DNA of 64,000 nt from Octopus sinensis (GCF_006345805.1 NC_043015.1:14260001-14324000); one strand, 5' to 3'. Shown: positions 10,269 through 62,489, counted from the first letter of the stretch. The notes: generated from the letters alone by a model not told the origin. A program made the numbers and translations.

Positions 10269-11329
10269 TTGACCAAAGCTTGAAAAAAGCCCATTGTGTG
10301 TGTGTGTATGTGTGTGAATCATTTAACATCTATTTTCCATGCTGGCATGGGTTAGACAGTTTGATTGAAGCTGGAAAGCTTCACTAGGCTCCAGTCTGTT
10401 TTGGCTTGGTTTCTATGGTTTCTAATGCCAACCATTCCATAGAGTGTTCTGGGCGTCTTTTATGTGTCACCAGCACAGGTGCCTTTTACATGTGCTTTTT
10501 ACCATGATTTCACTTTGCTTGACATGTCTTCTCAAGCACAGCAAATGACCAGAAGTCTTGGTTGCTTGGCATTGCCTCTGTGTGACTCAATGACTGAATG
10601 TGTATGGATGTGTGTATTTGTCACTTTCTCCTTTCCTTAACATAATGTTGCAGTTGTAAATGAGTGTCATTATCATCCGAGCAGTATCATTCAATTTCAC
10701 TTTTCATGAAAACATGCCTGATCTTGGGAAAATATTATCTTAGTTGAAAACAGATGAGAGTTAGTGACAGGAAGGGCATCTGGCTTTAGAAAACCTGACC
10801 CATCAAATTCTATCTGATTCTATCTTCTAATCCATCACCATATGTTCCCTTCTTTTACAGTTATATTTAAATATTACAAAATGCTTTCAGAGTTTGGTTT
10901 TATATTTAACTTTATCCTTTTGACTTCTTTCAGTAATTATGCTCCTCGGGCAGTTACCCTTCGAAAAACTCCCAATGGTTATGGCTTTGTACTACGAGGA
11001 GCTAGATGTAAGTATATCTTATCAAACATTTTAATTTTGTTTCATGATTAAACTGTGGCCATACTGATTTGCTGTGCTTGAGAAGACATGTCAAGCAAAG
11101 TGAAATCATGGTAGAAGGCACCTGTGCTGGTGACACATAAAAGACGCCCAGAACACTCTATGGAATGGTTGGCATTAGAAACCACAGAAACCAAGCCAAA
11201 ACAGACTGGAGACTGATGCAGCTTTCCAGCTCCAGTCAAACTGTCTAACCCATGCCAGCATGGAAAACAAACGTTAAATGATGATTATGATCACACATAC
11301 ACAATGGGCTTCTTTCAGTCTTTAGTCAA
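10269..11329. repeat. Inverted duplication (arms 10269-10546 and 11067-11329) around the first Shank PDZ exon
   Basis: Perfect reverse-complement blocks of 70 nt (10416-10485 / 11115-11184) and 47 nt (10500-10546 / 11067-11113), plus shorter matching blocks. Confidence 0.9.
10934..11007 (+). CDS. SHANK: Shank exon (first in window): start of PDZ domain, NYAPRAVTLRKTPNGYGFVLRGAR
   Basis: Polypyrimidine tract + ttcag acceptor, gtaagt donor, 74 nt. GYGFVLRGAR matches the Shank PDZ carboxylate-binding loop (vertebrate GFGFVLRGAK). Phase joins the next exon in frame. Confidence 0.93.
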
Positions 11330-11589
11330 GTCATGAGATTTGGCTACAGGAATAGTACTCAACTCTAGAAAATTTAACTCGATAAACTTCGTCCAACACA
11401 TGCTAGCATGGAAAAGTCAACATTAAAACAATGATAATGTTTGTGGCATAACATCCAATACAGAACATATCACAACTGCTGAAAGATTTGTGCATATGTT
11501 TGTAAATGATCTACAACATATTTGTGTGCACACTGACACTACTCATCCAGAGCATGCTGACTTCATTTCTTTTAACCCTTTGCAAGTTT

Positions 11590-11830
11590 TAAGTGGTCAC
11601 AGCCCTTGGCTCACTGCTATGGAGCATAGCTGTTCATACACAGGCATCATACAAATTGCCTTTCTGAGGGAGAGGCCCTTTGTTACTAACAGAGGTAGTA
11701 GCTCTCTGAATTTTGCCCAGCCCACTCTTATTCTAGCAGCTATGCTTTCTAGACCGCTTCCACCACTGCTAATTTGGTCACCTAAGTAACAAAAACTGTC
11801 TACTACTTCTACTGATCCCACCTGACATTT
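11590..11830 (-). mobile_element. RTE LINE fragment
   Basis: ORF 11597..11821: VEVVDSFCYLGDQIS..ARIRVGWAKFRELLPLL. Confidence 0.85.
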
Positions 11831-11955
11831 GAGGAAGTCTATTTTCCATACATTCCTGGTGTTACATACACCTACACTTAATAAATTTTTTAAACGTTAT
11901 ATTATTTAAATTAACTTGCAGTAATTTCTCTGGAACTTTTTTTTCCTTTTTGTAG

Positions 11956-12077
11956 CTGATCATCAATTTCTTAATCATGTTTCAAATAATTCACCTGCCG
12001 TGCAGTATCTGGACACTGTGGATGCTGGTAGTGCTGCTGAAAAGGCAGGTCTTAGAGCTGGGGATTTCATATTGGAA
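11956..12077 (+). CDS. SHANK: Shank exon: PDZ core, (S)DHQFLNHVSNNSPAVQYLDTVDAGSAAEKAGLRAGDFILE
   Basis: ttttgtag acceptor, gtaagt donor, 122 nt. QYLDTVD..A..AGLR.GDFILE parallels vertebrate Shank QYLESVD..GVAWRAGLRTGDFLIE. Not in the ORF track (too short). Confidence 0.95.
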
Positions 12078-59589: not shown

Positions 59590-59825
59590 ATACACAGACA
59601 ACAGTATCTCACAAAATGTAAAGGGACTGTAAAAAAAGCTAAAACGTGGAGGGGACAGGTGGAGGAGGAGATTGGGCGGGATGGCTTGAGAAGCGAGGAC
59701 GCCCAAAACCAGGCAAGATGGCGAGACGGTGTGAGGGCGGTTGCTATGGCATTGAAGTAGATCCGACCACCCCACTTAATGGGAACAAAACCCAGATTTA
59801 AACACTGGATGATGATGATGATGCT
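59590..59825 (+). mobile_element. RTE LINE 3' end with (GAT)n tail
   Basis: WRGQVEEEIGRDGLRSEDAQNQARWRDGVRAVA followed by a short 3' UTR and gatgatgatg. Confidence 0.75.
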
Positions 59826-61329
59826 CTTTGGTCCATCTCTCTTTTAATTGTTTTCATTTTATTTTGACAGACACTAGCAATGAGAAGCAGACATTCTGTC
59901 AGTGGCCGTGGCTTCTGACTTGCATTACACATGCTTACTAGCGTGATGGCATAAAACTCAACATTTCTCACAAATTTTCATTTGGCTGAGATTATTTCTA
60001 TTCATATTTGTATTGTTATTCATGGCTTATGGGTTATATAATGTTACCATTGTTTTACATTCATTCATTTTTGCCTTTGTGTTTGTGCTTCATTCTTGGT
60101 TAAGCAATTTTTTTCAAAACAATATATTTTTTATGCATAATCAAAAGAAGGAGGACATAAAATAAGCATTAGTTGGTCTGGTTTGTTAATTTGGCTTAGA
60201 TATCTAGTGACATTATAGGACTTATTGTTTAACAGGAGGGCACTAGGCTTCACCATAACATGAAGCCAGTACTTTGTTATTATCATCATCATTGCTATTA
60301 TGTAAGACAGTAAGCTGGCAGAGACATTAGTGCTGAAAAAATGCTTTGCAATATTTCTTCTTGTGGAGGCGTGTGGCTTAATGGTTAGGGTGTCAGCATC
60401 ATGATCGTAAGATTGTGGTTTCGATTCCTGGACCAGGTGACGCGTTGTGTTCTTGAGCAAAACACTTCATTTCACATCGCTCCAGTCCACTCAGCTGGCA
60501 AAAATGAATAACGCTACGATGGACTGGCATCCTGTCCAGCTGGGGAACCATAAGCCAAAGAAACCGGGCCCATGAGCCTGGCTAGGCTTTAAAAGGGCGC
60601 ATTTACTTTTTTTTTATATTTCTTCTTACTCATTATATTCCAAGTTCCAATTCCACCAAGGTCAACTTTACCTTGCCTCCTTTCAGAGTAAATACAATAA
60701 GTAGTAGTTGAGCACAGGGTCTCTGAAACTGACTTGCCCCTACCCCCTAAAAAAACTGCTGGCCTTGTGCCAAATTTTGAAACCACTGTTATTATTTGGT
60801 GAGCTGGCAAAATCATTAGCATGTTGGACAAAGTGCTTAGCGGTATTTCATTCATCCATACATTCAGAGTTCAAATTCCATTGAGATCAGTTTTGCTTTT
60901 CATCCTCTGAAGGTCAATAAAATAAGTACCAGTTGAGTGCCAAAAAAAAAAGGTGAAGTTTCCTTCTCAACTCATAAGGGCCTGTTTCTTGGTTTCCATG
61001 CCGTATATATTCCTCACCTGGACAGGATGCTGGTCTGTTGCAGGATTACTCATTCTTGCCAGCTAAGTGGACTGGAGAAATGTGAAATGAAATGCTTTGC
61101 TCAAGAACACATATTGCCCAGTCCAGGAATCAAAACCACAATCTTACAATCATGAGTCCAACACCCTAACCAAACCACTAAGTCACATGCTTCCACACCA
61201 GTTGAGTACTGGGCTCAATGCAATCAACTTACCCCGAAATTGCTGGCCTTGTGCCAAAATTTGAAATCATTATCATTAACCTAGTGGTTAGGGTATTGCA
61301 CTTATGATTGCAAGGTCACAGTTTTAGAC

Positions 61330-62070
61330 CAGGTGGTGCCTCTGGACTTCTTCATGTACTGAAAAACCACCAGAAATGGCATCCTTGGGACCATGGCTTC
61401 CGTGCAAGAACCCTTGAAACTGCCTCCTCACAGGAGTTTGAACCCAAAAGAACATGACAGTAGACATGAGTTGTATTCTATTCACTGACGAAAGCAGAGC
61501 CATCCTTGACAAACCTGACAGTTGGGCAAACGGTTGGGTCTGTTTTGAAGATGAGCATCACCAACATTTACAACATCAACAAGAGGGTGGAGGAGACATG
61601 TTGTAGGCTGGTATCACTGGGGACAGACATGTTGGCCCAGTCAGGATAGCTGAAGAAATTAAAGTGACCACAACCACCTACTGCAATCTCCTGAAGGAAG
61701 TCTTGGCTCCCTGGTTAGATGACATACTGCTGTCACTTCTAAGGAATCTTGTATTCATGCATGGCAATGCTCCCTCCCACTCTGCTAGGACCACGTAAAA
61801 TTCCTAGGGTCTTACAGCATATTAGGTGAAAAGTTGATGGTGAGGCCGCTCGCATATCTGGATCTCAGCCCTATCGAAAATCTTTGGTCCATCATTAAAC
61901 AAGACGTTTATGCTGATGGAGGCCAATTTACATCGAAAGATGTCTTATGGGTGACCATCAAAGCTGTAGCAGAAGCAGTCCAACCTGCTACTATTAAGGA
62001 ATTGGCAGACTCCATAACTAATAGGGTTTTTGAAGTTATCTATCAAAATGGTGCCCATGTGGTTAAATAA
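61330..62070 (+). mobile_element. Decayed Tc1-like DD(34)E transposase
   Basis: LFTDESR, VFMHGNAPSHSAR and LDLSPIENLWSIIK (ORF 61834..62070). Confidence 0.88.
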
Positions 62071-62391
62071 TTCATTATGTCAATAAATGTTATAATATTA
62101 TTATGGGTTTCTGTTAAATATTTACTCAATGTATGCTTAATATGTATCATTACCACTGCTTCATAAATAGTGTTGGTGTGTTTACATCCCCATAACTTAG
62201 CAGTTCAGCAAAAGAGACCGACAGAATATGTACCAAGTTTGAAAAAAGAAAATGAATATTAGAGTCGATTCATTCAACTAAAATTTCTTCAAGGCGGTGT
62301 GCCAGTATGGCTGCAGTCTAACAAGTGAAACAGATAAAAGATACAAGCTTACAAAAAAAAAAGGAAAAAAGAAAAAACAAGGTATAAATAC

Positions 62392-62489
62392 CTTCACTAC
62401 ATTTGTTCCATTGGCAGCAGATACAAAATAAAGTGGCATTTTATGTTTCTCAGGAAAGTTAAAACTTTTCTTTGTCATATTCATATCAG
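62392..62489 (-). CDS. RABL2: RABL2 exon: (A)DMNMTKKSFNFPEKHKMPLYFVSAANGTNVVK (G5 region of Rab-like GTPase)
   Basis: Minus-strand tttttgtag acceptor and gtattt donor, 98 nt. Matches human RABL2 TQKSFNFAKKFSLPLYFVSAADGTNVVK as I recall it. Part of ORF 62278..62484. Confidence 0.92.

What the first reader, a model, noticed from the sequence alone, without database searches (positions are those of the whole stretch)
10934..62489. Shank and RABL2 are tail-to-tail neighbours, as SHANK3 and RABL2B are in human
The window holds Shank on + and RABL2 on -, converging, with no other gene I can find between them. In human 22q13.33 the order is SHANK3 (+), ACR, RABL2B (-), the block removed in terminal Phelan-McDermid deletions. 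Finding the same pair in the same orientation in an apparent mollusc implies linkage dating to the bilaterian ancestor (inference). That is notable because coleoid genomes are heavily rearranged. A synaptic scaffold and a ciliary IFT-associated GTPase share no obvious pathway, so a cis-regulatory or 3'-end constraint is the natural hypothesis. I do not know whether this pair has already been reported.
Basis: partly seen in the sequence, partly recalled or inferred. Interest (0 to 1): 0.8.

Follow-up and report, generated by a model that had tools for sequence, protein, structure and literature searches.

The report
Octopus Shank and RABL2 tail-to-tail neighbours
In this octopus sequence the synapse-scaffold gene Shank and the cilium GTPase gene RABL2 end only 1.5 kb apart, pointing at each other, as in several other molluscs and (with one gene inserted between them) in humans; this looks like a previously unlisted but ordinary example of old gene-neighbour conservation.

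Summary
The window is Octopus sinensis-type DNA. It holds the 3' part of Shank on the + strand: five exons, 10934-19979, from the PDZ domain to the SAM domain. They are identical to residues 529-1761 of NCBI 'protein shank isoform X2'. It also holds the last three exons of RABL2 on the - strand: 62489-62392, 27515-27432 and 21558-21499. The two stop codons are 1,519 bp apart, and no other gene was recognised in between.

The same convergent pair is seen in Argonauta (2.9 kb apart), Lottia (3.8 kb) and Elysia (7.6 kb), and probably in a scallop (10 kb). It is interrupted in an oyster. It was not seen within 10 kb in abalone, a chiton or the annelid Owenia.

In a lizard, an acrosin-like gene lies convergent to RABL2, as human ACR does.

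The linkage is therefore old in molluscs, and homology with the vertebrate SHANK3-ACR-RABL2B block is plausible. Bilaterian ancestry rests on only two phyla. No evidence supports a regulatory constraint; a tiny intergenic target is the simpler explanation.

The pair was not found in the searched literature. It is a new member of a known kind, of modest interest.

The parts
10934..11007 (+). Shank exon, start of the PDZ domain (…NYAPRAVTLRKTPNGYGFVLRGAR); first Shank exon in the window
   Evidence: AG/GT flanks. Matches P0121 around residues 529-553. PDZ Pfam hit on the spliced product.
11956..12077 (+). Shank exon, middle of the PDZ domain
   Evidence: AG/GT flanks. tblastn of P0121 residues 553-597.
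13228..13399 (+). Shank exon, end of the PDZ domain
   Evidence: AG/GT flanks. tblastn of P0121 residues 590-651.
14579..14668 (+). Shank exon (APEPPRRDPSTSLSFSKAKSKSFAEGMAEI)
   Evidence: AG/GT flanks. tblastn of P0121 residues 651-684.
16696..19979 (+). Shank terminal exon: long Pro/Ser-rich region, C-terminal SAM domain, stop codon at 19977-19979
   Evidence: Lies within the 1083-aa ORF. SAM_1 3.4e-16. 98.8% identity to P0121 residues 681-1761, differing only by gaps.
19980..21498 (.). Spacer between the two stop codons: 1,519 bp, about 27% G+C. It must hold both 3' UTRs. Several AATAAA/ATTAAA signals lie on each strand.
   Evidence: Only the first 150 nt or so after the Shank stop aligns with Argonauta.
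21499..21558 (-). RABL2 terminal exon (SFDVEDEGNLSLTDEQKKI, then TAA at 21501-21499). This is the hypervariable acidic tail, with no prenylation cysteine.
   Evidence: Polypyrimidine tract and AG acceptor. Aligns with the tails of bird RABL2. First minus-strand AATAAA signals are at 21389 and 21341.
27432..27515 (-). RABL2 penultimate exon (LFTDAIEAAVGYKLNTTDFLDKVMRELE): the extra C-terminal helix typical of RABL2
   Evidence: AG/GT flanks. tblastn against human RABL2B, E = 1e-5. 80% nucleotide identity to the Argonauta exon. Counterparts found in Lottia and Elysia.
27516..62391 (-). RABL2 intron of 34.9 kb, filled with transposon relics, SINE-like repeats and microsatellites. No host gene was recognised.
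62392..62489 (-). RABL2 exon (…DMNMTKKSFNFPEKHKMPLYFVSAANGTNVVK) carrying the G5 region SAA. It starts with two bases that complete a codon begun in the previous exon, which lies outside the window.
   Evidence: AG/GT flanks. tblastn against human RABL2B, E = 9e-11. Counterpart found in Lottia.

Best explanation
The window shows the 3' ends of two true orthologues, the postsynaptic scaffold Shank and the ciliary small GTPase RABL2. They lie as convergent (3'-3') immediate neighbours in an Octopus sinensis-type genome, with stop codons 1.5 kb apart.

This neighbourhood is inherited, not a local accident. It was present at least in the common ancestor of cephalopods, gastropods and (probably) bivalves. 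It is most parsimoniously the same linkage as vertebrate SHANK3-(ACR)-RABL2B, with ACR inserted later in vertebrates (inference).

The likeliest reason it has lasted is passive. The intergenic spacer is so short (1.5-10 kb in molluscs) that very few rearrangement breakpoints can fall in it without damaging one of the genes. Where the spacer was hit, as in oyster and in the vertebrate ACR insertion, both genes carried on. That argues against an obligatory shared regulatory unit (inference).

Shown here: gene identities, exon structure, spacing, and recurrence in other molluscs. Inferred: homology of the mollusc and vertebrate arrangements, and passive retention.
For: Gene identities:
- Shank: spliced 1246-aa frame, PDZ and SAM domains, 0 mismatches to O. 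sinensis Shank isoform X2; 120 listed hits, those with a descriptive name being Shank/SHANK/Prosap.
- RABL2: 79 aa from three in-phase exons. Best hits among 1.84 billion representative proteins reach E = 1.4e-20 at about 61% identity. Every named protein among the ten looked up is Rab-like protein 2A/2B. The tail exon aligns with bird tails.
- The exon layout fits the ancestral last three of eight RABL2 exons, with a hypervariable terminal exon (PMC4736243).

Recurrence of the pair:
- Argonauta hians: Shank(+) ends at L001:70744; RABL2(-) stop at 73671; the helix exon was verified.
- Lottia gigantea: a 218-aa RABL2(-) lies 3.8 kb downstream, with five exons verified by tblastn.
- Elysia chlorotica: a 242-aa Ras-family gene(-) lies 7.6 kb downstream and carries the RABL2 helix exon.
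- Ylistrum balloti: a 223-aa Ras-family gene(-) begins 10 kb downstream.

Vertebrates:
- Human order is ARSA, SHANK3, ACR, RABL2B (PMC7014655).
- In a lizard, RABL2 is followed 3.6 kb downstream by a convergent acrosin-like protease gene.

For passive retention:
- No non-repeat conservation between Octopus and Argonauta in the spacer or the first RABL2 intron.
- The pair is interrupted in an oyster.
Against: - Only two phyla show the linkage.
- The annelid Owenia has no RABL2 exon within 10 kb either side of Shank.
- Abalone and chiton show nothing within 10 kb.
- The identity of the scallop neighbour is unverified, because only 31 nt of it lie in the locus.
- Chance is not negligible. If gene order were scrambled only within conserved ancestral linkage groups, my rough estimate is that tens of human near-neighbour pairs would reappear as octopus neighbours by chance. 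A human-octopus match alone therefore proves little.
- No transcript data were available, so the UTR ends, any overlap, and actual use of the three RABL2 exons in octopus are unverified.
- The strands of the human genes come from my own knowledge, not from a tool.
Confidence: 0.6

Rival explanations
1. Selected linkage. The pair is kept together because the genes share function-bearing sequence. Either their 3' UTRs overlap, so that convergent transcription or antisense pairing tunes one or both genes, or the RABL2 introns carry Shank enhancers (the 'bystander gene' model of genomic regulatory blocks).
For: - The spacer is extremely tight for a 2-3 Gb genome: 1,519 bp between stops, with poly(A) signals of both strands interleaved.
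- Orientation is the same in every species where the pair was seen.
- The RABL2 intron is very large, 34.9 kb.
- Conserved pairs in general show excess co-expression and regulatory linkage (PMC3514665; PMC9023564).
Against: - No non-repeat conserved sequence between Octopus and Argonauta outside exons in the part that could be compared.
- ACR sits between the genes in amniotes, and another gene follows Shank in an oyster.
- 3'-3' pairs are the minority among conserved pairs, and their orientation is conserved in only 15-25% of cases.
- The 34.9-kb intron is full of transposon relics.
- There is no known functional link between the two proteins.
Confidence: 0.15
2. Coincidence. The mollusc linkage is real and old, but the vertebrate SHANK3-ACR-RABL2B neighbourhood arose independently, so nothing dates to the bilaterian ancestor.
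For: - The pair was absent within 10 kb in the only non-mollusc protostome that could be tested by sequence (Owenia).
- The vertebrate genes are not strictly adjacent, because ACR lies between them.
- A genome-wide comparison is expected to yield some chance matches (my estimate).
- Systematic studies avoid two-gene blocks because of false positives (PMC9023564).
Against: - The same two single-copy families occur in the same convergent orientation in both phyla.
- ACR is a lineage-restricted gene, so its insertion is a simple one-step difference.
- The spacers are very short in molluscs.
Confidence: 0.25

Closest known systems
Human 22q13.33 terminal block ARSA-SHANK3-ACR-RABL2B (Phelan-McDermid region)
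   Same: The same two gene families are near neighbours. Shank lies upstream and RABL2 faces it: SHANK3 on +, RABL2B on - (strands from my own knowledge; gene order from PMC7014655). A lizard shows an acrosin-like gene convergent to RABL2 at 3.6 kb.
   Different: In octopus nothing lies between the genes, and the stops are 1.5 kb apart. In human ACR intervenes and tens of kb separate the genes (distance from my own knowledge). Vertebrates have three Shank paralogues, and only SHANK3 keeps RABL2 nearby. The human block lies next to the telomere, and RABL2 is duplicated in primates.
Conserved ancient microsyntenic pairs (Irimia et al. 2012, PMC3514665) and metazoan microsyntenic blocks (Schmidbaur et al. 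2022, PMC9023564)
   Same: Two unrelated genes have stayed neighbours over hundreds of millions of years, in several lineages, with a short intergenic distance.
   Different: - Most such pairs are head-to-head (5'-5'); this one is 3'-3'.
- It is a two-gene unit, so the three-gene definition used for cephalopods would not list it.
- Neither paper's main text, nor the six held supplements of the second, mentions Shank or RABL2. The first paper has no supplements held.
Convergent gene pairs with overlapping 3' UTRs (natural antisense transcripts)
   Same: Tail-to-tail genes with a spacer short enough (1.5 kb) that the UTRs may touch or overlap.
   Different: Overlap is not shown here, because there are no transcript data. 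The spacer is 3-10 kb in other molluscs, and another gene fills it in amniotes.

Membership tests
Shank/ProSAP postsynaptic scaffold | PDZ domain followed by a long proline-rich region and a C-terminal SAM domain | tested here: met
   PDZ 7.4e-15 and SAM_1 3.4e-16. PPPP-rich stretches lie between them in the spliced product.
Shank/ProSAP postsynaptic scaffold | N-terminal ankyrin repeats and an SH3 domain | not testable with these tools
   These exons lie upstream of the window. The identical annotated protein P0121 carries precomputed Ank family hits.
Shank/ProSAP postsynaptic scaffold | Best database matches are Shank orthologues | tested here: met
   P0121 'protein shank isoform X2 [Octopus sinensis]' matches with 0 mismatches. 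Of the 120 listed hits from molluscs to fish, those carrying a descriptive name are called Shank/SHANK/Prosap; the rest are unnamed, 'hypothetical' or 'uncharacterized'.
RABL2 small GTPase | GTPase core with G1-G4 motifs | not testable with these tools
   These exons lie beyond position 64000. Motif and tblastn searches found none in the window.
RABL2 small GTPase | G5 region plus the RABL2-specific extra C-terminal helix | tested here: met
   PLYFVSAANGTNVVK followed by LFTDAIEAAVGYKLNTTDFLDKVMRELE aligns at about 60% identity with vertebrate RABL2. The helix is described in PMC4736243.
RABL2 small GTPase | No C-terminal prenylation motif; the hypervariable tail sits on its own terminal exon after a phase-0 intron | tested here: met
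   The tail SFDVEDEGNLSLTDEQKKI* has no cysteine. It is a separate exon after …ELE|gt. This matches the ancestral gene architecture.
RABL2 small GTPase | Closest relatives are RABL2 and not other Rab/Ran proteins | tested here: met
   The search against 1.84 billion representatives gave 412 hits. Ten of the best were looked up: seven clusters carry a Rab-like 2A/2B (RBL2A/RABL2B) name, three carry only uninformative names, and none is named as another GTPase. The only PDB hit was Rab27A at E = 0.98.
Ancient conserved microsyntenic gene pair | Orthologues adjacent in several anciently diverged lineages | tested here: met
   Octopus, Argonauta, Lottia and Elysia verified by sequence; scallop probable. 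Amniotes have one intervening gene.
Ancient conserved microsyntenic gene pair | Presence in three or more phyla, or in an outgroup to Bilateria | tested here: inconclusive
   Owenia is negative within 10 kb. The spider is uninformative. The Lingula isoform was not on record. Deuterostome invertebrates and cnidarians could not be reached.
Ancient conserved microsyntenic gene pair | Signs of shared regulation: conserved non-coding sequence or co-expression | tested here: inconclusive
   No non-repeat conservation between Octopus and Argonauta in the spacer and the roughly 7 kb of RABL2 available. Expression could not be tested.

The most novel reading that the evidence does not exclude
The convergent Shank/RABL2 junction is a functional unit kept for more than 500 million years. 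The two transcripts would overlap or collide at their 3' ends, or Shank regulatory elements would sit in the RABL2 introns. RABL2B would then matter for SHANK3 regulation in the Phelan-McDermid region, and the octopus 1.5-kb spacer would be the minimal form of that unit.
Probability: 0.12. Interest if true: 0.6.

Novelty: new member of a known kind. Interest (0 to 1): 0.3.

Why it matters
If the linkage is ancestral to bilaterians, it adds a disease-relevant locus, the end of human 22q13.33, to the catalogue of very old gene neighbourhoods. It would also be one of the less common 3'-3' examples. Surveys that need at least three genes per block, or strict adjacency in human, would miss it.

It raises a concrete and cheap question: do Shank and RABL2 transcripts overlap at their 3' ends in molluscs, and does that influence either gene?

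If retention is merely passive, it is a tidy illustration that very short spacers protect neighbourhoods even in the heavily rearranged coleoid genome, and nothing more.

Tried and rejected
- The word-indexed protein search with the 60-aa RABL2 fragment found no candidate. The fragment was then searched with full HMMER instead.
- The human RABL2B query returned only tetrapods among the 120 listed hits. Invertebrate RABL2 proteins therefore could not be used for locus look-ups, and synteny had to be tested from the Shank side with 10-kb flanks.
- Look-ups of O. sinensis Shank X2 and Lingula Shank X2 failed, because only the longest isoform is on record.
- The spider Shank gene was too long for its DNA to be returned.
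- PDB holds no close RABL2 sequence for this fragment; the only hit was Rab27A at E = 0.98.
- Pfam gave no hit for the 60-aa fragment.
- A search for an 'NFE…' tail like Argonauta's failed. The real tail exon was found by scanning AG-preceded acidic ORFs and confirmed by alignment.
- A nested gene inside the RABL2 introns was considered and rejected. None of the eight ORFs of at least 90 aa from that stretch has a Pfam hit. Shorter ORFs resemble transposon relics by eye. There are no Rfam or tRNA hits. The full set of 307 ORFs of at least 50 aa was not run through Pfam.
- Loci L002, L004, L006 and L008 were not copied to the script machine. Abalone was therefore checked by reading ORFs only. 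For the chiton and the scallop flank only the gene tables were used.
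Full report
**What the window is.** It has 64 kb, no Ns and 27-42% G+C. The spliced Shank product is identical, apart from one 13-aa insertion, to residues 529-1761 of NCBI 'protein shank isoform X2 [Octopus sinensis]'. It is 92-93% identical to the O. bimaculoides protein. The DNA therefore comes from O. sinensis or a near-identical member of that species complex.

**Shank (+ strand).** Six-frame reading and splice-site inspection gave five exons:
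- 10934-11007
- 11956-12077
- 13228-13399
- 14579-14668
- 16696-19979

All five have AG/GT flanks and compatible phases. They join into a 1246-aa open frame ending at the stop codon 19977-19979. Pfam finds a PDZ domain (7.4e-15) and a C-terminal SAM_1 domain (3.4e-16).

tblastn of the annotated octopus protein finds no earlier residues in 1-10900.

**RABL2 (- strand).** A human RABL2B sequence that I recalled from memory proved 99% identical to the top database proteins and 96% identical to a protein NCBI names human RABL2B. It hit two minus-strand segments, with E = 9e-11 and 1e-5.

The DNA shows clean exons:
- 62489-62392 is 98 nt. Its first two bases complete a codon from the preceding exon.
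- 27515-27432 is 84 nt and ends in phase 0.

The third exon was not found by a simple pattern search or by nucleotide similarity to Argonauta. A scan for acidic ORFs preceded by AG and a polypyrimidine tract gave a single candidate, 21558-21499, encoding SFDVEDEGNLSLTDEQKKI*.

The joined 79 aa were searched with phmmer against 1.84 billion representative proteins.
- There were 412 hits. The best had E = 1.4e-20 at about 61% identity, and the alignments ran into the tail exon.
- Of the ten top hits looked up, seven clusters carry a Rab-like protein 2A/2B name; the other three have only uninformative names.
- The octopus tail aligns with bird tails: ELESFDVEDEGNLSLTDE against ELESFDLEKESENSSDKEE.

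The layout matches the last three of the eight ancestral RABL2 exons: a G5 exon, an extra-helix exon, and a hypervariable terminal exon without a prenylation motif (PMC4736243). The GTPase core exons are not in the window.

**Between the genes.** The stop codons are separated by 19980-21498, which is 1,519 bp of AT-rich sequence. Poly(A) signals occur on both strands.

The two RABL2 introns are 5.9 kb and 34.9 kb.
- None of the eight ORFs of at least 90 aa that I scanned from this stretch has a Pfam hit.
- Several shorter ORFs look by eye like Tc1/mariner transposase and LINE endonuclease relics.
- A SINE-like repeat family is also present in Argonauta.
- (TA)n-type microsatellites are common.
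- There are no Rfam or tRNA hits.
- The one Pfam hit, a reverse-transcriptase fragment at 3199-3540, lies in the Shank intron, outside this stretch.

I found no other host gene. Not every short ORF was profiled.

**Is the arrangement shared?** Locus look-ups could be made only for proteins returned by the word-indexed search, and flanks were limited to 10 kb. I therefore went out from Shank orthologues.

| Species | Group | Result |
|---|---|---|
| Argonauta hians | octopod | Retained. Stops are 2.9 kb apart; RABL2 helix exon and a short tail exon identified. |
| Lottia gigantea | patellogastropod | Retained. A 218-aa gene(-) lies 3.8 kb downstream; five RABL2 exons verified. |
| Elysia chlorotica | heterobranch gastropod | Retained. 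A 242-aa gene(-) lies 7.6 kb downstream; helix exon verified. |
| Ylistrum balloti | scallop | Probably retained. A 223-aa Ras-family gene(-) begins 10 kb downstream; identity unverified. |
| Saccostrea cucullata | oyster | Interrupted or lost. The next gene is an IgGFc-binding-domain gene, with no RABL2 exon. |
| Haliotis rufescens | abalone | No gene or obvious RABL2 exon within 10 kb. |
| Liolophura sinensis | chiton | No gene called within 10 kb. |
| Owenia fusiformis | annelid | No gene and no tblastn hit within 10 kb. |
| Argiope | spider | No gene called within 10 kb; no DNA returned, so no RABL2 search was possible. |

In a lizard, RABL2 is followed 3.6 kb downstream by a convergent gene. 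Its long ORF has a trypsin-like catalytic region (…GDSGSPL…) and a huge Pro/Thr-rich tail, so it is acrosin-like. There is no Shank sequence within 10 kb. This matches the human order ARSA, SHANK3, ACR, RABL2B (PMC7014655).

**Interpretation.** The pair was present in the ancestor of cephalopods, gastropods and probably bivalves. That is a Cambrian-age linkage which survived the coleoid genome reshuffle.

Homology with the vertebrate block is the simplest reading, because ACR is a lineage-restricted gene. It is still an inference from two phyla. My rough calculation runs as follows:
- With about 10^4 shared gene families and random genome-wide order, about one same-orientation near-neighbour coincidence is expected between two genomes.
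- If scrambling is confined within conserved ancestral linkage groups, the expectation rises to tens.
- The human-octopus match alone is therefore weak, and the multi-lineage mollusc data carry the weight.

**Why retained?** Nothing found here points to shared regulation.
- Apart from repeats, only exons and about 150 nt after the Shank stop align between Octopus and Argonauta.
- The junction has been invaded at least twice, by ACR in amniotes and by another gene in oyster.
- 3'-3' pairs are not the class for which co-regulation is usually found.

The very small spacer makes passive retention the economical explanation. The 1.5-kb spacing does leave open overlapping 3' UTRs, which only transcript data can settle.

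**Prior reports.**
- No paper in the searchable library combines RABL2 with microsynteny, or SHANK3 and RABL2B with synteny. The single hit for 'syntenic' was a paper on the 3q29 deletion locus, judged unrelated from its title and abstract.
- The main microsynteny paper does not mention either gene in its text, and none of its supplements is held.
- The cephalopod microsynteny paper requires at least three genes per block. Neither its main text nor its six held supplements mention either gene.
- The RABL2 evolution paper does not discuss gene neighbours.

Absence from this library is not proof that the pair is unreported. Synteny browsers surely display it for vertebrates.

**Verdict.** This is a new member of a known kind, a conserved neighbour pair, and of modest interest.

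Noticed in passing
window 18850-18890 (Shank terminal exon, residue 872 onward of the partial product): The window encodes 13 extra residues, in the repeated 'SDKPN…/KSDKL' region, compared with NCBI O. sinensis Shank isoform X2. Otherwise there are 0 mismatches. This could be a repeat-number polymorphism, an assembly difference, or an internal alternative splice.
   Followed up: partly
window 18227-18526: The Shank terminal exon contains a short tandem peptide repeat, ENKPVVK repeated 4-5 times, inside a Lys/Asn-rich stretch that aligns poorly outside octopods.
   Followed up: no
window 9644-9756, 58373-58462, 13544-13634, 6760-6866, 44521-44603, 62664-62757, 15058-15134, 32418-32502 and others: A repeat family of about 90-110 bp, SINE-like, has at least 10 copies on both strands of the window. 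It matches two places in the Argonauta RABL2 introns at 79-86% identity. ARAGORN finds no tRNA-like head.
   Followed up: partly
window 61442-61887 (+), 54709-55167 (-), 49045-49473 (-): Broken ORFs that look by eye like Tc1/mariner-type transposase remnants (e.g. …LDLSPIENLW…, …VWQQDSAPYHTS…). One lies only about 500 bp from the RABL2 exon at 62392. Pfam gave no hit for the two that were scanned.
   Followed up: partly
window 2765-3540 (+); 53876-54202 (-); 63850-63954 (+): A reverse-transcriptase fragment (RVT_1, 3.5e-7) lies in the Shank intron. There are also two LINE-type endonuclease-like fragments (…[14 protein letters not shown]…), identified by eye.
   Followed up: partly
window about 47550-47650, 50380-50480, 54200-54530 and others: Long (TA)n-rich microsatellites produce spurious 'YIYIYI' ORFs on both strands. 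Similar arrays occur in the Argonauta locus.
   Followed up: no
L007 24941-28294 (-), Lacerta agilis: The acrosin-like gene next to lizard RABL2 has a single 1118-aa open frame. Most of it is made of hundreds of residues of tandem Pro/Thr-rich repeats (PTPETKPETTSQ…, TEAPSKPTTEAPSTP…), far longer than I would expect for acrosin. The annotated product is 1255 aa with no Pfam hit on record.
   Followed up: no
L009 55725-57316 (-), Saccostrea cucullata: In this oyster the gene that follows Shank, convergent and 8 kb downstream, is a 435-aa IgGFc-binding-domain gene instead of RABL2. The pair has been interrupted or lost in that lineage.
   Followed up: partly
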